The translations under genes and the position numbers were made by a program. Under the pieces are notes generated by a model. That model saw only the letters and a program-made list of their open reading frames with translations, had not been told where the DNA came from and ran no database searches. From the IMG/VR virus record IMGVR_UViG_3300028558_000016, positions 1-64,000 of that record: DNA of 64,000 nucleotides. One strand, given 5' to 3'. Positions 497 through 9,094 of the stretch are shown here, piece after piece (the stretch's first letter is position 1; each line of letters opens with the position of its first letter).

Positions 497-1039
497 TTAA
501 TAATTTTTTAGCTTATGAATATCTTCAGGTCCGTTTAGCACAACCCAATCTCTGTCCTTAAACACAAAATGAATTGTAAGCTTTATGTCAGGCCTCTTCG
601 TCCACAGCTCAGTGAAATTCTCAATGTGTTCGATCATGTCATCAAAGAATTCTATCTCCTTAACGTCAGGATAATGCTCATCGATTATTCTTATCGCTCG
701 GTCAACCTTCTTTTTCCCGTCATACTTCAATGAATGGTGATGGAAATAAAGCTTGTTCTTCTCGAGTATTGGCATGATGTTTGGCTTTAGCCTATACATC
801 CTGTTTGTCAACACAACCTTTGCTGCAGTGTAATCCTCAGTTGCACGCATGTAATGAGGAAGTATACACTCCAACGGTTTAATGTTGAATTCAGGCATGA
901 GGCTTTCCCATCTACCCCACCAACCATTATGAGGATATGGAACACCTTTAATCCTCTCGTATTCCTTCTTCCCTTCATCGGGAAGAGGAACATCGAGAAG
1001 AGTGCCGTCCATGTCAAATATGTAAAGTTTTGTTATCAT
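497..1039 (-). CDS. HAD-family phosphatase, Swiss Army Knife RNA-repair-like HAD
   Basis: N-terminal FDMDGT motif, GWWG segment, C-terminal FFDD motif; adjacent to an RNA ligase. Confidence 0.75.
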   Translation of the reverse strand: MITKLYIFDMDGTLLDVPLPDEGKKEYERIKGVPYPHNGWWGRWESLMPEFNIKPLECILPHYMRATEDYTAAKVVLTNRMYRLKPNIMPILEKNKLYFHHHSLKYDGKKKVDRAIRIIDEHYPDVKEIEFFDDMIEHIENFTELWTKRPDIKLTIHFVFKDRDWVVLNGPEDIHKLKNY

Positions 1040-1065
1040 TTATTTCTATTTACTAATTTACTAAA

Positions 1066-2487
1066 TTAAACAATTACATTATAGCCTTTGATCAAATCGT
1101 TGTACAATTCTTTACCATCGAAATCCATCATGTATCTCTTAGAGCTTTTTGGACCTCCGATGAAATCAAAGAAGAACCCTTGGTGCTTCTTCAACTTTCT
1201 TTCTACAACAAATCTCATTACTTTTGCTGCCAACTTCTTTCTCAAGTTGGTCGCAGTTTCATCGCCTCTGTCGGAAGCACATTCTCTTATAGAAGATATT
1301 TCATCACGAGTGAATCCCAGCTTCTCAAAATCAACTGTGTCGATCTCAGCGATGTCTTTCACGTGAGTCAATCCAAGCTTAGCAAGAACATCTGCTCTCA
1401 AACCTCTCGATTCAAAAGTGATTGCATCCTTGTGCTTTCTGTATTCAATGAACTCCTCGTAAGTGGAAATTTCAGAAGTCAACTTGTCAATTTCTTTTAA
1501 AGTTCTCTTCCATCCTTCTTGCAAGTGTTCAATCTCTTCTCCTCTTCCTGGGAAAGTCGCCTTGTATTCGTTCACGTTGTCCTCACCAGATCTAACGATG
1601 TCGATCAATCTCCAGAACGCAGTTGAGTCCTTGAAGAAGTGGATTGCACAGTAAGCTGGATTCTTCATTTTTACACGAGGGTATCCAAACTCAGTATGCT
1701 TTCCATAATCACAAACAACATAACCTTCCTCACGGTAAGTCATGCCATCGAAAGACTCTTTCAATTTATCTGGAGAAGAATTCAATGCAAGAGTTGGAGC
1801 CATTGGCACACCAAGATCTTTTGATATAATCTCAAGATCAACGAAAGAAACTTCTTCCAAAGTATCAAGCTTTCTTGCACCCAACAAATAGACAGCACTG
1901 TCTTGGTGTGGTGTAACAACAATGTTGTACTTAGTACAAAGCTCAAACGCCAAAGTATATCCATCATATTTCTTAAACAAAGCTTTTACCCACTCAGTTC
2001 TAAGATCACAATGTTCCATCATTCTCACATCGTCATCTTCTCTCTTAACAGTCTCCATGAAAGCGTGAACGAACAAATCCGAGAATGTTCCTCCAAGCTT
2101 AGTATAGTGAAAGTTATCCACATCACCTTCTCCGTTAGCAGTTCCAGTTGTTCCGAAGCAAACTTCTCCTGTAACGTAATCAGTGTAAACGTGAATCATT
2201 GTTCCATCCATCTTTTTGAAGATCCTTGCAGACTCCCAGTTTATAGGTGCTGCGTGTCCTTCTCCAAGGTTGAAGAATTTTCTGAATGCAATGGACATAA
2301 CTCTCCAAGTATCTTTCTCAACTACAAGTCCTCTCGCATCTCTAACTTCCTCGTTAGTGAAGTTGGATTCGATAGAATCGTACTTAAGCAATACCTTGTG
2401 AGGATAGTCCTTGTGCTTCAATTTGAAGTCAGCAAGAGTCTTCTCAAGACCGTGCTCTTTTAGGTATTTTGTTATTGCGAGTTCCAT
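1066..2487 (-). CDS. rnl1: T4 Rnl1-like RNA ligase with C-terminal extension
   Basis: EVRDARGLVVE, AFRKFFNLGE, motif I KMDGT, AFEL, EEGYVV, RVKMK. Confidence 0.85.
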   Translation of the reverse strand: MELAITKYLKEHGLEKTLADFKLKHKDYPHKVLLKYDSIESNFTNEEVRDARGLVVEKDTWRVMSIAFRKFFNLGEGHAAPINWESARIFKKMDGTMIHVYTDYVTGEVCFGTTGTANGEGDVDNFHYTKLGGTFSDLFVHAFMETVKREDDDVRMMEHCDLRTEWVKALFKKYDGYTLAFELCTKYNIVVTPHQDSAVYLLGARKLDTLEEVSFVDLEIISKDLGVPMAPTLALNSSPDKLKESFDGMTYREEGYVVCDYGKHTEFGYPRVKMKNPAYCAIHFFKDSTAFWRLIDIVRSGEDNVNEYKATFPGRGEEIEHLQEGWKRTLKEIDKLTSEISTYEEFIEYRKHKDAITFESRGLRADVLAKLGLTHVKDIAEIDTVDFEKLGFTRDEISSIRECASDRGDETATNLRKKLAAKVMRFVVERKLKKHQGFFFDFIGGPKSSKRYMMDFDGKELYNDLIKGYNVIV

Positions 2488-2498
2488 TTCAAATATGA

Positions 2499-3023
2499 TT
2501 AGTAATGTTTACTTTTTCTTTTCTTTTTTCTACAAACAAGGTCAGCAGCGCAAGAAGCCGCGTAGGCATCTGGCTTTGATCTTACCCTGTATCCGGCAGC
2601 TCTTATGAATCCCATTCCAGAATCGTAAGCAATGTTGCTTTTCCATCTTGGATTTGGATTCAAGTCAAGGTCGATGTCAACAAGCTTCTCCATTGGAGAA
2701 ATTCTTGCATAAACCCCTTCAAGCTCCTTTTCAAGGTATTCGCCAACAGCGAAAGCTCGTTCAACTTCGCCCCAAAGCTTTGAATACATGTCCTTAGCTC
2801 TTGGAACGTTGTCAATACTGAAAATGTAGTGGGCACCTGCACCAACGTGGTATACAAGAACAACCGTTGCATAACGTGTCTTGTTTTTTTGATGCTCGGA
2901 GTCACATCCAACATAGATGCGGATTCCGTTTGGTGATGTGGACATGTGAGTCTTGATGTATTCCCTCATGTAGATACCGAGGTCATCAATGAATGCACCG
3001 CCAAATTTTTTAAAGTTTTTCAT
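2499..3023 (-). CDS. RNase H-like YkuK/DUF458 family protein
   Basis: IYVGCDS, GAGAHYIF, KLWGEV, DIDLDLN and KPDAYAASCAAD motifs. Confidence 0.8.
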   Translation of the reverse strand: MKNFKKFGGAFIDDLGIYMREYIKTHMSTSPNGIRIYVGCDSEHQKNKTRYATVVLVYHVGAGAHYIFSIDNVPRAKDMYSKLWGEVERAFAVGEYLEKELEGVYARISPMEKLVDIDLDLNPNPRWKSNIAYDSGMGFIRAAGYRVRSKPDAYAASCAADLVCRKKKRKSKHY

Positions 3024-3139
3024 TTTCGTTTCTCCTTTCTCTGTGTGTTTGTTTTAACAGCATAAAAGAGAGAAACACACGTCTCAAAATTATACCGGTT
3101 TTTATCGGTTTGTTTCTGAGAACGCGTTTGGAAACTAAT

Positions 3140-3337
3140 CTAATTCATTTCGAACCATCTTCGTTTAAACATTATTCTCAGCCTCGCGTAAGTACGAAGT
3201 CGCGACCATTTAAAATAGACGCTTTTTGTAGTCCTATTTGACCCTCGCGGGGAAACATGACCACATCTTTTTATTAGAATGTGTTCTGCACATTTTAAAT
3301 CTTCAAACTCCTTCATATTACAATCTTTAAAGTCCAT
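3140..3337 (-). CDS. Hypothetical protein
   Basis: 65 aa ORF co-oriented with neighbours; no motif recognised. Confidence 0.45.
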   Translation of the reverse strand: MDFKDCNMKEFEDLKCAEHILIKRCGHVSPRGSNRTTKSVYFKWSRLRTYARLRIMFKRRWFEMN

Positions 3338-3355
3338 TTAATATTATATATCATT

Positions 3356-3646
3356 TTAAAATAATCCATTCTCGAGTATGTCAACGTGTTTCTTCAAAAC
3401 ATCTCCGTGACAACTTGACGGTTTGCACCAACATCCTAAAGTTTTTCCTTTTAATTCTCCCAATCGATCCATCAGGTCTTTATTGTTCAAAAGGTATTCC
3501 TCGTATTTTTCAATTGCTTCCTTTCTCGAGGAAACCTTAAACTCAGCAAGAGTTCCCTCTTTATGAGAATAAGGATTTCCCCAAATGGAAGGACGTCCAA
3601 TATAGACGTCGTACTTATCTTTCTTACAGTGGACAACTTTACACAT
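3356..3646 (-). CDS. DUF4326 domain protein
   Basis: VVHCKK..DVYIGRPSIWGNPY...LKGKTLGCWCKP..CHGDVL. Confidence 0.85.
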   Translation of the reverse strand: MCKVVHCKKDKYDVYIGRPSIWGNPYSHKEGTLAEFKVSSRKEAIEKYEEYLLNNKDLMDRLGELKGKTLGCWCKPSSCHGDVLKKHVDILENGLF

Positions 3647-3657
3647 TAATTAATTTC

Positions 3658-4347
3658 TTATGCGTGCAGCTGTCTAATGTTTCCCTTGTACAACTCCTTG
3701 ATGGTTATTTTTCTTCCTGTTACGTGATCAAGAACAAAACCATCCTGTTCTCTGTAAGTTCTTCTCTTGTCGTTTCTGTTTCCATAACCGATTTGATTGA
3801 ACCTCGTCTCTTTCACCTTGGCACCTATCGCACCATCATTAATGTCCTTGAGCCTTTCTTCAAGTCGTGCCCAAGCAGTCTCTTCATTTTTTTCTCTGGT
3901 CCTGTGCTCTTCAACTCTCACTATCATTCCAGTTGGAATATGAGTCAACACGCAAACAGTTTCTACCTTGTTTCGGTTTTGACCGCCGTTACCAGATCCA
4001 CGAGTGTACTTTCGATGCACGTCGTTTCTATTTAAGACAAATTTTGGTTGGGAGTTTTCTTCCATTACAGCTACCGTCACGGTGCTGGTCTGTACTCTTC
4101 CTCTCTTTTCAGTTGGAGGAACTCTTTGCCATCTATGTCCGCCTGATTCGTTCTCAAAGAACTTCCTGACTCCGTTTCCAGTCAGTCATAGCGAGACATA
4201 ACCTGGCATTCAGTGTTCTACTGCAGAAGCAAATTGATTGATGCTTGCGGCCTTTTGATAAATGTCCGCCATTTCATTGACGAGGAGCTTTGCATCTTCT
4301 CCTCCTTCTGCTGCTCGAATTTCGAGCTTGATCTTTTCTGTTTTCAT
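3658..4347 (-). CDS. Short class I peptide chain release factor (RF1/PrfH-like, 229 aa) with two in-frame TGA codons (4210-4212, 4186-4188)
   Basis: Manual translation from ATG 4347: [22 protein letters not shown]...[52 protein letters not shown]...TRGSGNGGQNRNKVET. The RF motifs EIRAxxGG, ESGGHRxQRVP (PxT) and GGQ lie in one frame; the track ORF 3658..4080 is only the 3' part. Confidence 0.85.
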
Positions 4348-4427: not shown

Positions 4428-5015
4428 CTACTTAAGTTTCTTTTTCTTTGTCAATTCTATTAATTTCTCTCTTGCCAATTGTTGTTCAACATAATCAGCG
4501 ATAATTACTATAGTTGAATCGCTTATCCACATGTGGCTTCTTCCGTTCACAGTAAGAGAAAAATCTCCATCACTTGGATCAAGAACAACCTCTGTTATCT
4601 TCTTGATTGGATTGTGCTTCTCTTTATCTTTCGCATCTCGTTCTAACGAGAATTTTGCCATTATGTCGCTGTTCCATTTCTTTGCATTTTTCTTGCTTTC
4701 TCCGGTGTAATTGAAATACTCAACATATTCTTTCAAAGGATTTCCTCCGTTTGCATTATTCAAACCACCTTTTAAAGTGTTTGCGTCTTCCATAATGACG
4801 TTTAAGTTTGTCCAGTCCTTCACCTTCTTCCAATTCTTATTCACATACACCTTCGCACATTCAGCAACTATTTGCATTGCTGCAATGTGTTGTCTATATT
4901 CGTTGTAGAAATTAGATGTCACAGAAAATTTTGAAGATTGCACTGTCTTTTCGTTTTCCTTGTCAGTCATCGAAACCGGGCGCATCATCATTCCATATAT
5001 CTCATTCTTTTTCAT
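4428..5015 (-). CDS. Hypothetical protein
   Basis: 195 aa ORF with phage-like codon composition. Confidence 0.7.
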   Translation of the reverse strand: MKKNEIYGMMMRPVSMTDKENEKTVQSSKFSVTSNFYNEYRQHIAAMQIVAECAKVYVNKNWKKVKDWTNLNVIMEDANTLKGGLNNANGGNPLKEYVEYFNYTGESKKNAKKWNSDIMAKFSLERDAKDKEKHNPIKKITEVVLDPSDGDFSLTVNGRSHMWISDSTIVIIADYVEQQLAREKLIELTKKKKLK

Positions 5016-5271
5016 CTTCTTTTATTGTTAGGTCGATTTCTACTATCTTCCATGTCAAACATTCTTCGAGATTCTCCACAAAAACAGGATGAACCTGATT
5101 ATCTCCTTTTTCTTTTCTCAACCAAACACCTTTGTTCCATTGAGAAACCCACCAGCCTATAGTTCCATCTGGTGCTTTAACTTTAATTTTATTTAAACCG
5201 CCAAATCCTTCAGGAAGATCAGCAATGGTTTTTATCTCCTTGCCTTCAAGAATTATCTTTTTGTTTTTCAT
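5002..5271 (-). CDS. Hypothetical protein
   Basis: 89 aa ORF directly downstream of the last tRNA. Confidence 0.65.
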   Translation of the reverse strand: MKNKKIILEGKEIKTIADLPEGFGGLNKIKVKAPDGTIGWWVSQWNKGVWLRKEKGDNQVHPVFVENLEECLTWKIVEIDLTIKEDEKE

Positions 5272-5297
5272 AAAAGTAAATGTAATAAAAAATTTTG

Positions 5298-5370
5298 AGC
5301 CGATGACAGGGATCGAACCTGCGACCTCCTCTTTACGAAAGAGGCGCTCTACCAGCTGAGCTACATCGGC
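5298..5370 (-). tRNA. tRNA-Thr(CGT)
   Basis: GCCGATG acceptor, GCTC/GAGC D-stem, CCTCT-TTCGTAA-AGAGG anticodon arm, GCAGG-TTCGATC-CCTGT T-arm. Confidence 0.95.
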
Positions 5371-5374
5371 AAAT

Positions 5375-5457
5375 GAAACCGAGCTTTTATTTAGGGACTT
5401 AAGGCAGGTTGCTCTGCTCTGATATTTGCCCAGGAGAATCTTACTCCTATCGGTTTC
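5375..5457 (-). ncRNA. Candidate structured small RNA (element D) in the tRNA array
   Basis: 8-bp closing stem GAAACCGA/TCGGTTTC enclosing the hairpins TAGGAG/CTCCTG and GGCA/TGCC. Confidence 0.4.
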
Positions 5458-5547
5458 TCATGGCTTGTCGTCCTGAAACATTTTGTATACAAGCCAACCC
5501 ATCACAATAACTGCAATGACAATAACTATGTAACAAAATATATCCAT
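5458..5547 (-). CDS. 29-aa single-TM micropeptide
   Basis: Manual translation MDIFCYIVIVIAVIVMGWLVYKMFQDDKP*, lying between RNA genes. Confidence 0.45.
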   Translation of the reverse strand: MDIFCYIVIVIAVIVMGWLVYKMFQDDKP

Positions 5548-5548
5548 G

Positions 5549-5634
5549 TGCAGTAGGTGAGATTCGAACTCACAACCCCCTGATTGGAAGTCAGGTGCTC
5601 TATGCTTTCGCGTCCAATTAGGAGCTACTACTGC
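5549..5634 (-). tRNA. Atypical tRNA with TCC (Gly) anticodon, enlarged D-loop, Lys/Arg-like body
   Basis: GCAGTAG/CTACTGC acceptor with A73, 21-nt D-loop containing GC-GAAA-GC, anticodon arm CCTGA-CTTCCAA-TCAGG. Confidence 0.8.
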
Positions 5635-5660
5635 AAGTGCGAACTTTCCATCGCATTAAT

Positions 5661-5720
5661 TGGAGCAACCTCAGTTAACTGATTCGCATTTCTGCGAGGG
5701 GGGAGTTAACCTCTGGTTGC
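5661..5720 (-). ncRNA. CCA-ended hairpin RNA (element A)
   Basis: GCAACC..GTTAAC..TCGCA-GAAA-TGCGA..GTTAAC..GGTTGC-T-CCA. Confidence 0.6.
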
Positions 5721-5725
5721 GTAAT

Positions 5726-5773
5726 TGGAGCCGAGGGGCCGTTCTCCAACGGTGAGTTCCCTTTCAACTCGGC
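5726..5773 (-). ncRNA. CCA-ended hairpin RNA (element B)
   Basis: GCCGAG..GGG..CCGTT-GGAG-AACGG-CCC-CTCGGC-T-CCA. Confidence 0.6.
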
Positions 5774-5778
5774 ATGTG

Positions 5779-5869
5779 CGGGGAAGATTGGAATCGAACC
5801 AATTAGTTTGATTTGCAGAAGACATTCTTTTTAAACAGAATGGTGCTCAGCCACCCGAGCATCTTCCCC
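5779..5869 (-). tRNA. Aberrant tRNA (Cys GCA-like remnant) with inserted hairpin; possible pseudo-tRNA
   Basis: GGGGAAG/CTTCCCC acceptor, GCTC/GAGC D-stem, ATTGG-TTCGATT-CCAAT T-arm. The central region has a CATTCT/AGAATG hairpin followed by CT-GCA-AA-TCAAA-CTA. Confidence 0.6.
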
Positions 5870-5874
5870 TTTTA

Positions 5875-6057
5875 TTATTTTCTCTTTCTCTCTTCGTCTA
5901 AATATCTATCATGTTCGTCTTTTGAATAGATCTCATAGTAACCACATTTTACTTTGTAATAAAATGGTGACATGTATTTCCATTCCTTGTTAACATCAAT
6001 GAATTTAGATTTTTCTAAAATCTGATTTTCCTCATCCGTCGGTTTGATTGTAATCAT
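5875..6057 (-). CDS. Hypothetical protein
   Basis: Track ORF 5875..6120; the in-frame ATG at 6057 (MITIKPT...) is the likelier start. Confidence 0.5.
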   Translation of the reverse strand: MITIKPTDEENQILEKSKFIDVNKEWKYMSPFYYKVKCGYYEIYSKDEHDRYLDEERKRK

Positions 6058-6195
6058 CGTTTTGTTTTTAGTTATTAAATAGGATGGGAAAACTTTAAGC
6101 GATAGTCTTTCGACAGGCAAGTTATTTTTTCATCGATGATTGATCAAGTCACCTCAAAATAAAATACTTTTCTACACTTCAGCACTTTCCCTCTG

Positions 6196-6268
6196 AGCGG
6201 AAAACGGGGCTCGAACCCGCGACCTTAACCTTGGCAAGGTTACGCTCTACCAACTGAGCTATTTCCGC
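6196..6268 (-). tRNA. tRNA-Gly(GCC)
   Basis: GCGGAAA acceptor, U73, TAACC-TTGCCAA-GGTTA; canonical cloverleaf. Confidence 0.95.
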
Positions 6269-6269
6269 A

Positions 6270-6400
6270 TGGTGCAGTGTAATTAAAAGGGTTGGACTTA
6301 TCTTCCATTCGTCAATGGCTCTTACCAACTTTCGATGTCACGATTAATTTTAAGCGCAAAACGATTCTATTGTCGAATTTTCTATTTGCGCCGACACTGC
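6270..6400 (-). ncRNA. 131-nt multi-stem RNA with 7-bp acceptor-like stem and ACCA end (element C)
   Basis: GCAGTGT/ACACTGC-A-CCA closing; internal stems GCGCAAA/TTTGCGC, AATTAA/TTAATT, GTTGG/CCAAC, CCATT-GACG-AATGG. Confidence 0.6.
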
Positions 6401-6407
6401 ATTTTTG

Positions 6408-6480
6408 AGCGGGAGACGAGGTTCGAACTCGCGACCTATAGCTTGGAAGGCTATCGCTCTACCAACTGAGCTACTCCCGC
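6408..6480 (-). tRNA. tRNA-Gly(TCC)
   Basis: GCGGGAG acceptor, U73, ATAGC-CTTCCAA-GCTAT; canonical. Confidence 0.95.
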
Positions 6481-6518
6481 GTGCGGACATTGTTTCGGGT
6501 ACAACGTCCAAAACCTAA

Positions 6519-6592
6519 TGGGGCCAGGATCGAACTCGCGTCCGACGAATGGAAGCTAATGAGGCCATCCAAACCGCTCATTATCGCCTGGC
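6519..6592 (-). ncRNA. 74-nt CCA-ended tRNA-like RNA lacking canonical arms (element E)
   Basis: GCCAGG/CCTGGC-C-CCA closing, TAATGAG/CTCATTA hairpin, GAGTTCGATC T-loop-like motif without a T-stem. Confidence 0.55.
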
Positions 6593-6645
6593 ATTTGTTG
6601 ATGATACACAACATTATATACCGACTGTATAAAAATGTTTTAATG

Positions 6646-6718
6646 TGACCCCGGTGGGGATCGAACCCACAACCACCTGATTAAGAGTCAGGAGCTCCAC
6701 CAATTGAGCTACAGAGTC
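6646..6718 (-). tRNA. tRNA-Lys(CTT)
   Basis: GACTCTG/CGGGGTC acceptor, CCTGA-CTCTTAA-TCAGG. Confidence 0.95.
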
Positions 6719-6748
6719 ATTTTGTTGATGCAATACGTCAAAGATCGT

Positions 6749-6973
6749 TCATTTCATGAAAAGATGTTTAATTCTTTCCATATCTACTTCAATAGTTTTA
6801 ATGTTCAACTTCTCTCCAGTCTTTTTAAAATGATCATACCAAAGTCTAACCTTTTCAGATTTTATTATCTGACCATTATAATTTTTCCTTTTCAACCATT
6901 CCTTTCCAAAATATAAAATTCGTTTTTCTGTTATTCTCGAATTCATTATATGTTTAAAAACTTTTTCAATCAT
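6749..6973 (-). CDS. Hypothetical protein within the tRNA array
   Basis: 74 aa ORF fitting exactly between two tRNAs. Confidence 0.55.
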   Translation of the reverse strand: MIEKVFKHIMNSRITEKRILYFGKEWLKRKNYNGQIIKSEKVRLWYDHFKKTGEKLNIKTIEVDMERIKHLFMK

Positions 6974-6974
6974 G

Positions 6975-7059
6975 TAGCGCTGGTGAGACTCGAACTCACA
7001 CTACCGTTAAGGAACCCGCTTATGAGGCGGGCACAATTACCACATCTGTTCACAGCGCT
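6975..7059 (-). tRNA. tRNA with CAT anticodon on a class II (long variable arm) scaffold
   Basis: AGCGCTG/CAGCGCT, A73, CCCGC-CTCATAA-GCGGG, 15-nt variable region, GTGAG-TTCGAGT-CTCAC. Confidence 0.85.
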
Positions 7060-7101
7060 ATCTCGTCTGCTTCTTTGTAGGCCCCGTACTATATCTACAA
7101 A

Positions 7102-7371
7102 TCATTTGGTGGGGCTGTCGGAAACAGCAGACTTTACTTTATTTTCTTTCTTATACGTCTTCAAGAATTCCAAAGCATTTTGCAATTCTTCGACCCTGTT
7201 CTTGTTAGAAGGAATGCTTCCATTTGCCTGTCTAACAGTCATCGGATCCGATGACGATAAATTCTTTTCAAAGAACTCTAAATTTCTTTCTTCCATTAAG
7301 AGTCTTTCTCTTAATAATTTTGCCACGTATGGCATCGGATCATATTGTCCTCTTTCTTCTTGTGTCTTCAT
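7102..7371 (-). CDS. Hypothetical protein within the tRNA array
   Basis: 89 aa ORF starting 2 nt after the CCA of the upstream tRNA. Confidence 0.6.
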   Translation of the reverse strand: MKTQEERGQYDPMPYVAKLLRERLLMEERNLEFFEKNLSSSDPMTVRQANGSIPSNKNRVEELQNALEFLKTYKKENKVKSAVSDSPTK

Positions 7372-7372
7372 T

Positions 7373-7464
7373 TGGTGCGCCCGGAGGGATTCGAACCCCC
7401 GTTGGTGTTATTCACACGTCTGATTAAAAGTCAGGACCATTCGGCCAGCTATGGGAACGGACGC
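7373..7464 (-). tRNA. tRNA with TTT (Lys) anticodon and long variable arm
   Basis: GCGTCCG/CGGGCGC-A-CCA, CTGA-CTTTTAA-TCAG, V-arm GTGT-GAATA-ACAC, GGGGG-TTCGAAT-CCCTC. Confidence 0.85.
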
Positions 7465-7478
7465 ATTTGTTTTTATTG

Positions 7479-7552
7479 TGCGCCCGGTTGGGTTCGAACC
7501 AACGACCCCCTGATTAAAAGTCAGGTGCATCTACCAGCTGAGCTACGAGCGC
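7479..7552 (-). tRNA. tRNA-Lys(TTT)
   Basis: GCGCTCG/CGGGCGC, CCTGA-CTTTTAA-TCAGG; canonical. Confidence 0.95.
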
Positions 7553-7774
7553 AAATATTTGGATATGGAAATCCTCTTGCATCTCGTATTTCAGCGAGAT
7601 GCCTTTACCGTTTATATTTCATTTTAGTTTTCATTATCATTATATTTTTTAAAAGAACAGAATACGTTTTTTACCTTTTCATTAAAATTGAAATGCTCGT
7701 TAGAGCTTGTTTGTTTTGCTGTACGTATTCTTTTTTCTTTTTAATTTCTACCACCATTCAGGATGCTTTTGTTT

Positions 7775-7880
7775 TGGCAAAGATTGGATTCGAACCAATG
7801 ACCTCTCGTTTACTTTCCTTAACAATGTTTCCATTGACGGGGATTTCAGGCGAGCGCTCTACCAACTGAGCTACTTATCC
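7775..7880 (-). tRNA. tRNA-Phe(GAA) with a 33-nt insertion after position 37 (intron-like)
   Basis: Standard D- and T-arms. Anticodon arm CTCG-C-CT-GAA-A-[33 nt including CAATG-GAAA-CATTG]-A-A-CGAG; the acceptor stem has two mismatches. Confidence 0.7.
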
Positions 7881-7908
7881 TTTTGTAATGCTGCATGCAT
7901 CCTTTTTG

Positions 7909-7981
7909 AGCCGAGAACCGGGGTCGAACCGGTGACCTTCCGCTTACAAGGCGGGTGCTCTACCAACTGAGCTATCTCGGC
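7909..7981 (-). tRNA. tRNA-Thr(TGT)
   Basis: GCCGAGA/TCTCGGC, CCCGC-CTTGTAA-GCGGA. Confidence 0.95.
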
Positions 7982-7984
7982 AAT

Positions 7985-8119
7985 TTACAAATATTCGTTC
8001 TTGTTACACTCAAAAAACAAAACCCACAACTCGTGAATTCTCTCATTCACTTCATCATTTCCATTTTGTCTCTTGTTTAACAAAGACATCAATTCGTTTA
8101 CTATGTCATCCTTTTTCAT
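7985..8119 (-). CDS. 44-aa hypothetical protein between Thr tRNAs
   Basis: Manual translation MKKDDIVNELMSLLNKRQNGNDEVNERIHELWVLFFECNKNEYL*. Confidence 0.45.
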   Translation of the reverse strand: MKKDDIVNELMSLLNKRQNGNDEVNERIHELWVLFFECNKNEYL

Positions 8120-8122
8120 TTG

Positions 8123-8195
8123 AGCCTACAACCGGGATCGAACCGGTCACCTCATCCTTACCAAGGATGTGTTCTACCAACTGAACTATGTGGGC
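8123..8195 (-). tRNA. tRNA-Thr(GGT)
   Basis: GCCCACA/TGTAGGC, CATCC-TTGGTAA-GGATG. Confidence 0.95.
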
Positions 8196-8317
8196 AATGT
8201 CTCCGATCGTAAAAATAATCTCTCAAATATTATCAAGATCATTTCCATTCTTTATTAAGCGGTCGGACACGCTACTACTAAATCCAAAAGTTGCAACTTC
8301 TGAATTTTTCATCTTTG

Positions 8318-8413
8318 AAGCGGGAGTGAGATTCGAACTCACGTTCTCTTTCGAGTTGAGGCTTATGAGGCCCTGCTGGCGTTTTGCAACTTCCATCTCC
8401 AGTCGATCCCGCA
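8318..8413 (-). tRNA. Initiator-like tRNA(CAT) with expanded D-loop and a V-arm
   Basis: T1:T72 mismatch plus GCGGGA/TCCCGC, D-stem CTGG/CCAG with long loop, GGGC-CTCATAA-GCCT, V-arm CTC-GAAA-GAG. Confidence 0.75.
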
Positions 8414-8419
8414 ATGTGT

Positions 8420-8541
8420 GCCGCTTCCTGGACCCTATCACCAGGATTTTCTTTGGACTACAGAAGAGAGATTCGCCAATTTTTTTCCATAGAATTAAAC
8501 CATATACGGCGCTTTTCTACACTCTCAACTTTCGCAAGCGG
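8420..8541 (-). ncRNA. Candidate structured RNA (element F)
   Basis: Closing CCGCT/AGCGG; internal GAGAG/CTCTC, CGCCG/TGGCG and TCCTGG/CCAGGA stems. Confidence 0.4.
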
Positions 8542-8552
8542 ACTTTTATTTG

Positions 8553-8624
8553 TAGCGGGAGATGGATTCGAACCACCGACCTCAGGGTTATGAGCCCTGC
8601 GAGCTACCCCTGCTCTATCCCGCA
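8553..8624 (-). tRNA. tRNA-fMet(CAT)
   Basis: 1:72 mismatch, three consecutive G-C pairs in the anticodon stem (CAGGG-CTCATAA-CCCTG), A73. Confidence 0.95.
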
Positions 8625-8631
8625 ATATTTA

Positions 8632-8747
8632 TTGGAACGCATACCAACTTCGCAAGAAGTTTCGGGTCAACAGTGACTCTTGTCAAGCTGCCTCCTACAT
8701 GATTGATCAAGCTCCATTCTTTCAGGGAGCACCATGGGCGGTTCCAA
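8632..8747 (-). ncRNA. Candidate structured RNA (element G), first RNA after the attenuator
   Basis: TTGGAAC/GTTCCAA closing; GCTCC/GGAGC, TGAC/GTCA and AACTT/AAGTT hairpins. Confidence 0.45.
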
Positions 8748-8782
8748 TTTTTTAATTTCAATAATTTCTTCAAAGAACAAGA

Positions 8783-8814
8783 CAAAAAAAATCCCAAACG
8801 TTTGGTTTGGGATT
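8783..8814 (-). terminator. Intrinsic terminator of the leader (attenuator)
   Basis: AATCCCAAAC-CAAAC-GTTTGGGATT 10-bp stem running into a U8 tract (the first two U also close the stem). Confidence 0.9.
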
Positions 8815-8837
8815 CGTAATTTCGTTATTAGTTAACG

Positions 8838-8933
8838 TCATTCGCACATCCCAAAACACATAGGCTTACCTTTCCCAGTTTTCGTGGTAGTAGTTGTACC
8901 TGTAGTTATTTTGAATATTTGTTGCGAATTCAT
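8838..8933 (-). CDS. Attenuator leader peptide (31 aa; Thr/Gly/Lys/Met/Cys/Phe-rich)
   Basis: ATG 8933 gives MNSQQIFKITTGTTTTTKTGKGKPMCFGMCE-TGA. It has 8 Thr codons using all four ACN; TTTGGGAT in codons 27-29 is complementary to ATCCCAAA in the terminator 5' arm. Confidence 0.8.
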   Translation of the reverse strand: MNSQQIFKITTGTTTTTKTGKGKPMCFGMCE

Positions 8934-8989
8934 GACGTTTTAATTTGTTATTCTACTCTATATACTTATCTTTGTTTCAATTTCTTTTA

Positions 8990-8997
8990 CAAATGTA
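8990..8997 (-). promoter_or_regulatory. Bacteroidota sigma70-type -7 element upstream of the leader
   Basis: TACATTTG matches TAnnTTTG, about 55 nt upstream of the leader ATG. Confidence 0.65.
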
Positions 8998-9094
8998 GAA
9001 CTTTTTTTAATAGCTTTAAAATAAATTTTTCGATGTGTGATTATTTATTCCATTGAAACTCACGTAATCTATTGAAAACTAATAGAATATAAGC

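What the first reader, a model, noticed from the sequence alone, without database searches (positions are those of the whole stretch)
5661..5720. CCA-ended hairpin RNA A: acceptor stem without a tRNA body
Seen: a 60-nt irregular hairpin with a 6-bp GCAACC/GGTTGC stem, GTTAAC/GTTAAC helix, TCGCA-GAAA-TGCGA cap, and 3' T-CCA. It has no D, anticodon or T arm. Most true tRNAs here lack an encoded CCA, so an encoded CCA on this hairpin looks selected. Inference: a minihelix-like decoy or substrate for synthetases, CCA-sensing toxins/nucleases or EF-Tu.
Basis: partly seen in the sequence, partly recalled or inferred. Interest (0 to 1): 0.7.

Follow-up and report, generated by a model that had tools for sequence, protein, structure and literature searches.

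The report
CCA-tailed mini-hairpin RNA in phage tRNA array
A giant soil phage carries, inside one of its tRNA gene clusters, a 60-base hairpin gene that looks like only the amino-acid-accepting end of a tRNA; it is real and selected, but what it does is unproven and its close relative lacks the final A of the tail.

Summary
The hairpin exists exactly as described, but on the minus strand (5720->5661). That is the sense strand of a tRNA array in a 482-kb rhizosphere megaphage. It folds at -22.9 kcal/mol (z = -4.8). No tRNA or Rfam model matches it, and it ends U-CCA, whereas only 4 of 55 tRNAs in the genome encode CCA.

Only one other lineage has a homolog (IMG/VR 3300032053_000382). There the basal 39 nt are 38/39 identical, the apex is replaced by a longer unrelated hairpin, and the 3' end reads UCC followed by U8. 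So the stem base and 'UCC' are conserved, the terminal A is not, and no covariation can be seen. Two other close relatives carry something else in the same slot.

The neighbouring 48-nt hairpin B (5773->5726) gives much stronger evidence for the class. It occurs in 8 phage lineages, once in each of the five phage records searched. Its UCCA is invariant, its only substitutions keep base pairs, and its 5' leaders are tRNA-like.

Best reading: A is a small non-tRNA gene matured by the tRNA-processing machinery (RNase P, 3' trimming, CCA repair) into a free acceptor-arm mimic. A purely cis-acting processing or stability element is the main rival. No RNA-seq run was listed.

The parts
5661..5720 (-). 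Hairpin A, 60 nt: the whole element from G1 (5720) to the A of CCA (5661)
   Evidence: MFE -22.9, z -4.84; CM R2 finds it once in the genome
5715..5720 (-). 5' strand of the acceptor-like basal stem (GCAACC)
   Evidence: identical in L002
5665..5670 (-). 3' strand of the basal stem (GGUUGC)
   Evidence: identical in L002
5661..5664 (-). Single-stranded 3' tail U-CCA (discriminator-like U plus CCA). The homolog has UCC followed by U8
5704..5714 (-). AGA internal loop plus the 5' strand of helix 2 (GGUUAACU). Loop position A7 (5714) is G in L002 and in a Logan contig of run X7
5671..5680 (-). 3' strand of helix 2 (AGUUAACU) plus the GA of the internal loop. My reading, not tested: a tandem G.A with a 1-nt bulge is possible
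   Evidence: reading of the sequence
5681..5703 (-). Variable apical part: C-rich internal loop and a 5-bp stem capped by a GAAA tetraloop. In L002 it is replaced by a longer, unrelated hairpin
5726..5773 (-). Sister hairpin B, 48 nt, ending U-CCA and lying 5 nt upstream of A. It is a conserved single-copy small RNA gene in large phages
5778..5869 (-). Upstream neighbour: an atypical 92-nt tRNA with an enlarged anticodon loop and a long variable region
5639..5654 (-). Small 4-bp hairpin in the 26-nt spacer between A's CCA and the next tRNA
5548..5634 (-). Downstream neighbour: tRNA-Gly(UCC) with a 21-nt D-loop insert. It anchors the slot in all four related arrays

Best explanation
Hairpin A is a small non-tRNA RNA gene embedded in the phage's tRNA operon. 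It is probably co-transcribed with the tRNAs and cut out by the same enzymes. RNase P would cut 5' of G1. The acceptor-like stem with a single-stranded NCCA is the feature bacterial RNase P RNA needs when a substrate has no tRNA elbow. The 3' end would then be trimmed back to the encoded UCC(A), with the terminal A restored by a CCA-adding enzyme where it is missing. The product would be a free rod-like 'acceptor arm without a tRNA'. Its working part is the conserved base: the 6-bp stem, the G/A-rich internal loop, the GUUAAC helix, the C-rich loop and the UCC tail. The apex is dispensable. I take it to act in trans as an acceptor-end mimic that occupies a protein recognising tRNA acceptor stems and CCA ends. 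Shown here: the structure, its strand and operon context, sequence conservation of the base, the unusual encoded CCA, and the existence of a conserved sister family with an invariant CCA. Inferred: transcription, the processing steps, a discrete product, and any trans function.
For: 1. The structure is significant and strand-specific.
2. It lies in the sense orientation between tRNAs. No terminator-like site lies in the spacers of the array (the two minus-strand matches are one just upstream of the array and one inside the 92-nt tRNA). No ORF covers it.
3. The basal 39 nt are 38/39 identical in L002. The tRNAs of the same array are 72-92% identical, the spacers cannot be aligned, and the neighbouring protein is 63% identical.
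4. Conservation begins at G1 and ends right after UCC.
5. Its spacing and leader resemble a tRNA gene. In L002 it starts 5 nt after tRNA-Gly with the leader AACAU. Genome-wide, tRNA leaders have U at -1 in 37/55 and A at -2 in 36/55.
6. Encoded CCA is rare on true tRNAs here (4/55) but present on A, on B and on other non-canonical tRNA-like elements.
7. Sister hairpin B shows the class is under selection. It occurs in 8 lineages, with UCCA and the AU leader invariant. All 98 pair cells are paired, 3 pairs show compensatory changes, and 0 of 500 shuffles reach the observed covariation score. It is present once in each of the five phage records searched.
8. The phage encodes a homolog of the CCA-adding enzyme.
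9. Published: hairpin model substrates are cleaved by RNase P RNA, and the 3' RCCA pairs with the P15 loop (PMC11143913).
Against: There are no expression or end-mapping data, and no RNA run was listed. Only two lineages carry A, so there is no covariation in its conserved helices. Identity could also reflect recent transfer. The homolog lacks the terminal A and is followed by U8. In the window the base at -1 is C, which is less favoured. A 26-nt trailer containing a small hairpin separates CCA from the next RNase P site. A is absent from two close relatives, which carry an HNH gene or a CCA-less hairpin in the same slot, so it is dispensable. The helix is not a 12-bp acceptor/T-arm mimic and has no T-loop. 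A single gene copy is a weak basis for a stoichiometric decoy.
Confidence: 0.45

Rival explanations
1. A is a cis-acting punctuation element only. The hairpin would serve the polycistronic tRNA/mini-ORF transcript as an RNase P or RNase E entry site, a barrier to exonucleases, or (in the relative) a terminator. The excised piece would have no function of its own.
For: Other lineages have different stable hairpins without CCA in the same slot (L009 hairpin, z = -3.5). The L002 copy is followed by U8. The slot is variable and is invaded by homing-endonuclease genes. Small ORFs are interleaved with the tRNAs and need their 3' ends defined. RNase P is known to process non-tRNA hairpins and mRNAs (PMC11143913).
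Against: A processing or stability signal needs shape, not sequence. Yet the loops and both helix strands of the base are 38/39 identical while the apex was swapped. There is no U-tract in the window copy, and in L002 the U-tract starts 3 nt after the stem. Hairpin B, built the same way, keeps its bulge sequences invariant across very different phages. That points to specific recognition.
Confidence: 0.27
2. The specific form of the first reader's idea: A is an anti-defence decoy. It would soak up or inhibit host effectors that attack tRNA 3' ends, such as toxSAS pyrophosphokinases, MenT/AbiEii nucleotidyltransferases or Cas12a3. This is a sub-case of the best explanation, so its confidence is counted within it.
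For: These effectors recognise the acceptor stem plus CCA and accept truncated hairpins or minihelices in vitro (PMC11559606, PMC12851939, PMC10435456). The array sits directly upstream of an RNA-repair module: a T4 Rnl1-like ligase, an RF-1/GGQ protein and a HAD protein. Phage tRNA loci are known anti-defence loci (PMC13096335). Hairpin B carries all four FaRel2 determinants of tRNA-Gly/Thr and sits beside tRNA-Gly genes (by reading).
Against: A has only G1-C and C2-G of the four FaRel2 determinants. The host and its defences are unknown. A is single-copy. No phage alarmone-hydrolase (HD_4) gene was found. There is no biochemical test, and I found no precedent for an RNA decoy of this kind in the literature searched.
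Confidence: 0.15
3. A is a non-functional remnant. It could be the scar of a degraded tRNA gene or of a mobile-element or homing-endonuclease insertion, or a DNA-level palindrome, whose CCA is coincidental.
For: It is present in only 2 of 4 close lineages. An HNH gene occupies the slot in L004. The outer arms form an imperfect inverted repeat around a variable core. The terminal A is not conserved.
Against: 38/39 identity of the arms where neutral spacers are saturated. There are no paralogs in the genome, so it is not a repeat family. The sense-strand RNA fold is far better than the antisense fold in L002. It shows no similarity to any tRNA.
Confidence: 0.13

Closest known systems
RNase P hairpin model substrates and natural non-tRNA RNase P substrates (pre-4.5S RNA, phage P1/P7 C4 antisense RNA, phage M3 RNA)
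   Same: A helix closed at its base, followed by a single-stranded 3' NCCA that can pair with the P15 loop of bacterial RNase P RNA. The 5' leader is tRNA-like, and some of these substrates are phage-encoded (PMC11143913).
   Different: The model substrates copy the 12-bp acceptor/T stack and the T-loop. A is a longer, interrupted rod with a GAAA cap. Cleavage of A has not been tested.
Phage T4 species 1 and 2 stable RNAs (RNA C and D) in the T4 tRNA gene cluster (from my own knowledge, not retrieved here)
   Same: Small, stable, non-tRNA RNAs encoded inside a phage tRNA operon, released by tRNA-processing enzymes, with function still unknown.
   Different: The T4 RNAs are about twice as long. 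No sequence or structural relation was tested. A megablast search of 5000-9000 and a blastn search of 5655-5780 against the phage collection found nothing for A.
Hairpin B of the same array (new family, model R1)
   Same: Same operon, 5 nt apart. It has a 6-bp basal stem, a 5-bp apical stem with a tetraloop, unpaired conserved stretches, a discriminator-like U plus CCA, and then AUUA.
   Different: There is no sequence homology: R1 does not hit A at E <= 1. B occurs in 8 lineages with covariation and an invariant CCA. A occurs in 2 lineages without either.
tRNA-Gly minihelix substrates of toxSAS FaRel2, and the truncated acceptor-stem hairpin with CCA cut by Cas12a3
   Same: Acceptor stem plus CCA is enough to be recognised by immune effectors that target the CCA end (PMC11559606, PMC12851939).
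   Different: Those are laboratory constructs, not natural genes. A carries 2 of the 4 FaRel2 determinants.
tRNA-like small RNAs made by RNase P/Z and CCA addition but not used in translation (mascRNA, gammaherpesvirus 68 vtRNAs; from my own knowledge)
   Same: They use tRNA-processing enzymes to produce a CCA-ended non-coding RNA, and some are viral.
   Different: These are cloverleaf-like and eukaryotic. The Rfam mascRNA model does not match A.

Membership tests
canonical tRNA | Cloverleaf with D, anticodon (7-nt loop) and T arms, recognised by tRNA models | tested here: not met
   ARAGORN makes no call and the Rfam RF00005 model gives no hit, even at E <= 5. The apical loop is a GAAA tetraloop.
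canonical tRNA | 7-bp acceptor stem, discriminator base, 3' CCA | tested here: inconclusive
   A has 6 bp plus U plus CCA. Position 7 is an A.A or G.A mismatch. The homolog has UCC-U.
acceptor/T-arm minihelix (RNase P, CCA-adding enzyme and aaRS model substrate) | Basal helix with a single-stranded 3' NCCA | tested here: met
acceptor/T-arm minihelix (RNase P, CCA-adding enzyme and aaRS model substrate) | About 12 stacked base pairs capped by a 7-nt T-loop | tested here: not met
   A has 6 bp, a 3/2 internal loop, 8 bp, a 6/3 loop, 5 bp and a GAAA cap.
acceptor/T-arm minihelix (RNase P, CCA-adding enzyme and aaRS model substrate) | Cleaved at +1 by RNase P, or extended or charged at the 3' end | not testable with these tools
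   Needs enzymology or end-mapped RNA-seq. No RNA run was listed.
hairpin B family (model R1) | Match to the covariance model built from 6 B sequences | tested here: not met
   R1 finds exactly one hit per genome, which is B. A is not reported at E <= 1.
intrinsic terminator | G+C-rich stem immediately followed by a U-tract | tested here: not met
   The terminator scan does not call it, and the window copy is followed by AUUAAUG. The L002 copy has U8 starting 3 nt after the stem.
tmRNA or other curated RNA family | Match to ARAGORN's tmRNA model or to any Rfam 15 model | tested here: not met
substrate or decoy of toxSAS FaRel2 | G1-C72, C2-G71, G4-C69 and Pu5-Py68 in the acceptor stem, plus CCA (PMC11559606) | tested here: not met
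   A reads G-C, C-G, A-U, A-U, C-G, so it has 2 of 4. B has all 4. This is by reading. Other toxSAS have different, unknown specificities.
repeat or mobile element (MITE-like) | Several copies per genome | tested here: not met
   There are no paralogs by blastn-short or by CM R2.

The most novel reading that the evidence does not exclude
Large phages encode dedicated 'acceptor-arm-only' RNAs, hairpin A and the widespread hairpin B. These would be cut out of tRNA operons by RNase P and carry a genuine CCA end. They would act as RNA decoys or inhibitors of host immune effectors that attack tRNA 3' ends (toxSAS, MenT/AbiEii, Cas12a3). That would be a new class of RNA-based anti-defence.
Probability: 0.15. 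Interest if true: 0.85.

Novelty: new variant of a known kind. Interest (0 to 1): 0.5.

Why it matters
Phage tRNA arrays are now read as counter-defence loci, but their non-tRNA contents are almost unexplored. T4's two stable RNAs have had no known function for about fifty years. Here a megaphage array holds at least two genes that keep only the acceptor stem and CCA of a tRNA. One of them (B) is conserved with covariation and an invariant CCA across phages of 129 to 642 kb. If these RNAs are processed and have free CCA ends, they are natural minihelices. They would be direct probes for what recognises a tRNA 3' end in an infected cell: RNase P, the CCA-adding enzyme, synthetases, EF-Tu, or CCA-targeting immune effectors. 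The last option would make them the first RNA decoys of that kind. Hairpin A alone is a modest, lineage-restricted case. Its value lies in being a second, independent example of the same design next to B.

Tried and rejected
1. tRNA, tmRNA or a known RNA family: no match.
2. Protein-coding: no ORF covers it.
3. Another genetic code: three tRNA-CUA genes exist. Reading TAG through raises coverage by frames of 100 aa or more only from 0.907 to 0.931, less than TGA or TAA does. I therefore kept the standard code.
4. Terminator: not called in the window.
5. Paralogs or a repeat family: none.
6. More homologs of A: four pattern scans of viral contigs, one scan of prokaryote genomes, CM R2 on three other phages that carry B, and blastn against the phage collection found only the one IMG/VR contig. 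A metagenome scan anchored on the neighbouring tRNA found only that contig, the window's own contig and L009.
7. Synteny through the adjacent 195-aa protein: 58 homologs were found, but only the closest keep the tRNA array.
8. Expression: no RNA run was listed. DNA runs gave only two loop variants, A7->G and one C fewer.
9. A as a diverged copy of B: rejected.
10. K-turn reading of the AGA/GA loop: the bulge would be 1 nt, not 3, so it was not pursued.
11. Anti-Shine-Dalgarno reading of the C-rich loop: by eye, the two genes I checked (the 89-aa and 29-aa ORFs) have no Shine-Dalgarno-like sequence upstream, so I dropped it.
12. Phage alarmone hydrolase (HD_4) as a hint of toxSAS pressure: none found.

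Full report
**What is there.** The window is the first 64 kb of a 482,156-bp virus record from a rhizosphere metagenome. The genome carries 55 ARAGORN tRNAs in several arrays. The finding lies in the first array, whose 11-13 tRNAs are all on the minus strand between 8624 and 5297. It has a 6-bp GCAACC/GGUUGC stem and an AGA/GA internal loop. Next come an 8-bp GGUUAACU/AGUUAACU helix and a CCCCCC/AUC loop. A 5-bp stem with a GAAA tetraloop caps it, and a single-stranded U-CCA follows the basal stem. The fold is -22.9 kcal/mol, and none of 200 shuffles folds as well (z = -4.84). No tRNA, tmRNA or Rfam model matches it, even at E <= 5. No ORF covers it.

**Is the CCA unusual?** Yes. Of the 55 tRNAs, 54 have C74, 40 read N73-C-A, and only 4 encode a full CCA. 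I scanned the genome for stable non-tRNA hairpins with a 6-bp closing stem followed by N+CCA. Three lie on the sense strand of tRNA arrays, against about 0.4 expected. Seven control trinucleotides give 0 or 1. Other non-canonical, tRNA-like elements of the genome also end in CCA. The phage has its own homolog of the CCA-adding enzyme, as expected for a genome whose tRNAs need CCA added.

**Relatives of A.** I used the adjacent 195-aa protein, DNA patterns and a covariance model. These found four related versions of this array.
- In IMG/VR contig 3300032053_000382 (L002) a homolog of A starts 5 nt after tRNA-Gly(GCC). Its first 21 and last 18 nt are 38/39 identical to A. The apex is replaced by a longer, unrelated hairpin. 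The overall architecture is kept (-30.0 kcal/mol, z = -3.0, against z = -0.3 for the antisense strand). The 3' end reads UCC followed by eight U.
- The tRNAs of the same two arrays are 72-92% identical, the spacers do not align, and the neighbouring protein is 63% identical. The base of the hairpin is therefore the best-conserved piece of the array.
- A Logan contig from a watershed metagenome shows two differences, both in loops: A7->G, as in L002, and one C fewer.
- Two other close relatives carry something else in the slot. L004 has an HNH endonuclease gene plus an unrelated spacer. L009/L016 has a different stable hairpin without CCA.
- No further homolog turned up in viral contigs, prokaryote genomes, the phage collection or three other large phages. 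There is no paralog in the genome.

A is therefore a single-copy, lineage-restricted and dispensable element. Its base and 'UCC' are under purifying selection, or were recently transferred. With two sequences whose stems are identical, covariation cannot be assessed. The terminal A of CCA is not conserved.

**The neighbour settles that the class is real.** Five nucleotides upstream lies a 48-nt hairpin B (5773->5726), built on the same plan and ending U-CCA-AUUA, like A.
- Distribution: B has homologs in L009/L016, in four further IMG/VR phages of 129 to 371 kb plus two fragments, and in the 642-kb uncultured phage LR756502.1.
- Conservation: across the seven sequences aligned, every substitution lies in a helix and is compensated. 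All 98 pair cells are paired, 3 pairs change on both sides, and 0 of 500 shuffles reach the covariation score.
- The LR756502 copy changes two acceptor pairs to U.G and G.U. These keep pairing only on the sense strand (by reading).
- Ends: UCCA and the AU at -2/-1 are invariant, and conservation stops exactly at the A of CCA. In three phages the next tRNA starts one nucleotide after that A.
- Copy number: model R1 finds exactly one B in each of five phage records and does not hit A.
- Contrast with tRNAs: in these loci only about 7 of 87 tRNAs encode CCA.

B therefore behaves like a mini-tRNA gene with a selected CCA end. A is a second, unrelated sequence of the same design sitting next to it.

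**How it most likely works.** The following is established knowledge. Bacterial RNase P RNA cleaves simple hairpins that carry a 3' NCCA. The RCCA pairs with its P15 loop. RNase P also processes several non-tRNA hairpin RNAs, some of them phage-encoded (PMC11143913). From my own knowledge, CCA blocks RNase Z, so CCA-bearing precursors are finished by exonucleases. Against this background, an RNA without a tRNA elbow would need an encoded CCA to be recognised and finished, while the true tRNAs of this phage can do without one. That would explain why the non-canonical elements carry CCA here. The 5' leaders fit as well. Genome-wide, tRNA leaders have U at -1 in 37/55 and A at -2 in 36/55. B has AU in all lineages, the L002 copy of A has AU, and the window copy has AC. 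I therefore read A as a gene whose product is cut out by RNase P and trimmed or repaired to UCCA. In L002, trimming of the U-tail back to UCC and addition of A by a CCA-adding enzyme would give the same end; this step is inferred. The sequence-level conservation of loops and of both helix strands, with a freely exchangeable apex, argues for specific recognition of the base of the hairpin. A mere structural spacer would not need it. I put about 0.45 on 'processed, trans-acting acceptor-arm mimic' and about 0.27 on 'cis-acting punctuation only'. The remainder goes to a remnant or a DNA-level element.

**The decoy idea.** Recent work shows that several anti-phage effectors act on the CCA end and read the acceptor stem.
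- toxSAS enzymes pyrophosphorylate it. FaRel2 selects tRNA-Gly and tRNA-Thr through pairs 1, 2, 4 and 5, and it modifies a bare minihelix (PMC11559606).
- MenT/AbiEii-type enzymes extend it (PMC10435456).
- Cas12a3 cuts it and accepts a truncated acceptor hairpin with CCA (PMC12851939).

The array lies directly upstream of an RNA-repair module: an RF-1/GGQ protein, a T4 Rnl1-like ligase and a HAD protein. B carries all four FaRel2 determinants and sits beside tRNA-Gly genes. A carries two. The host is unknown and the gene is single-copy. No phage alarmone hydrolase was found. I found no report of such RNA decoys. I give it about 0.15 for A.

**Comparison and novelty.** A is not a tRNA, not a canonical minihelix, not a member of the B family and not a terminator (see the membership table). 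It works like the RNase P-processed non-tRNA hairpins and recalls the unexplained stable RNAs of the T4 tRNA cluster. As a natural gene that keeps only an acceptor-like stem and CCA inside a phage tRNA operon, it is a new variant of a known kind. On its own evidence A is modest: two lineages, no covariation, CCA not fully conserved, no expression data. I score interest at 0.5. Most of the weight comes from A being a second instance of the design that hairpin B shows to be conserved and selected.

Noticed in passing
window 5726-5773 (-); L009 203-250 (-); L017 3543-3590; L018 640-687; L019 8036-8083; L020 245-292; L021 153-200 (-); L036 394-439: Hairpin B is a 48-nt CCA-ended RNA, present once in each of the five phage records searched (four complete genomes of 129-482 kb and one fragment) and also found in a 642-kb phage. 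UCCA and both 6-nt bulges (UUGAAA, AACUCA) are invariant in seven lineages, and every substitution keeps a base pair. The LR756502 copy has a shorter first bulge. It almost always lies beside tRNA-Gly, and its acceptor pairs 1, 2, 4 and 5 equal the FaRel2 determinants of tRNA-Gly/Thr. It has no Rfam family. It deserves a report of its own.
   Followed up: yes
whole genome (G000), all 55 tRNAs: 54 of 55 tRNA genes have C74 and 40 of 55 read N73-C-A, as if one C of CCA were left out. Only 4 encode CCA. The 5' leaders are A-rich, with U at -1 in 37 of 55.
   Followed up: partly
window 6519-6592 (-): A 74-nt tRNA-like element with a 6-bp closing stem, a T-arm-like hairpin and a CCCA tail, missed by ARAGORN and Rfam. 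It is conserved in L002 (4942-5018), L004 and L009.
   Followed up: partly
window 5375-5459 (-): An 85-nt multi-helix RNA between a mini-ORF and tRNA-Thr(CGU). It is conserved in L004 with compensatory changes in two helices (GAAACCGA/UCGGUUUC becomes GAAACGGA/UCCGUUUC, and AGGAG/CUCCU becomes AGAAGA/UCUUCU). It has no CCA.
   Followed up: partly
window 5548-5634 (-): tRNA-Gly(UCC) with a 21-nt D-loop that contains a GCGAAAGC mini-hairpin. It scores only 31.8 bits with the tRNA model but is 92% identical in L002 and present in all four related arrays.
   Followed up: partly
window 5778-5869 (-): A 92-nt tRNA with an 8-10-nt anticodon loop (UGUUUAAAAA) and a long, poorly paired variable region. 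ARAGORN calls it Asn, and it gives a weak hit to the tRNA-Sec model (23.5 bits). It is absent from the relatives.
   Followed up: no
window 5458-5547 (-): A 29-codon hydrophobic mini-ORF starting one base after the tRNA. An ORF of similar size and character occupies the same position in L002, L004 and L009.
   Followed up: no
window 497-4080 (-): An RNA-repair-type module directly downstream of the array: a 140-aa RF-1/GGQ protein (ArfB-sized), DUF4326, an RNase H-like protein (PF04308), a T4 Rnl1-like RNA ligase and a HAD protein (just below the Pfam cut-off: 23.4 bits against 25.6). The syntenic relative L004 lacks the ligase but adds a 2H phosphoesterase.
   Followed up: partly
G000 78095-78153 (-), 374199-374273 (+), 374873-374964 (+), 415892-416020 (+), 417396-417479 (+): Further non-canonical structured elements outside the window that end in N-CCA. 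One is tRNA-like with a GCAA tetraloop where the anticodon loop should be. Another is a 41-nt hairpin plus UCCA directly in front of a tRNA-like element.
   Followed up: no
G000 358020-358092 (-), 368276-368349 (+), 374278-374351 (+): Three tRNAs with a CUA anticodon, yet reading TAG through barely raises open-frame coverage (0.907 to 0.931). There is no sign of genome-wide TAG reassignment.
   Followed up: partly
L004 3350-3631; L002 4285-4881; L019 about 7600-8025: Free-standing homing-endonuclease-type ORFs (HNH, GIY-YIG) sit in spacers of the related tRNA arrays, as in T4 and T5. They coincide with the slots where hairpins A and B come and go.
   Followed up: no
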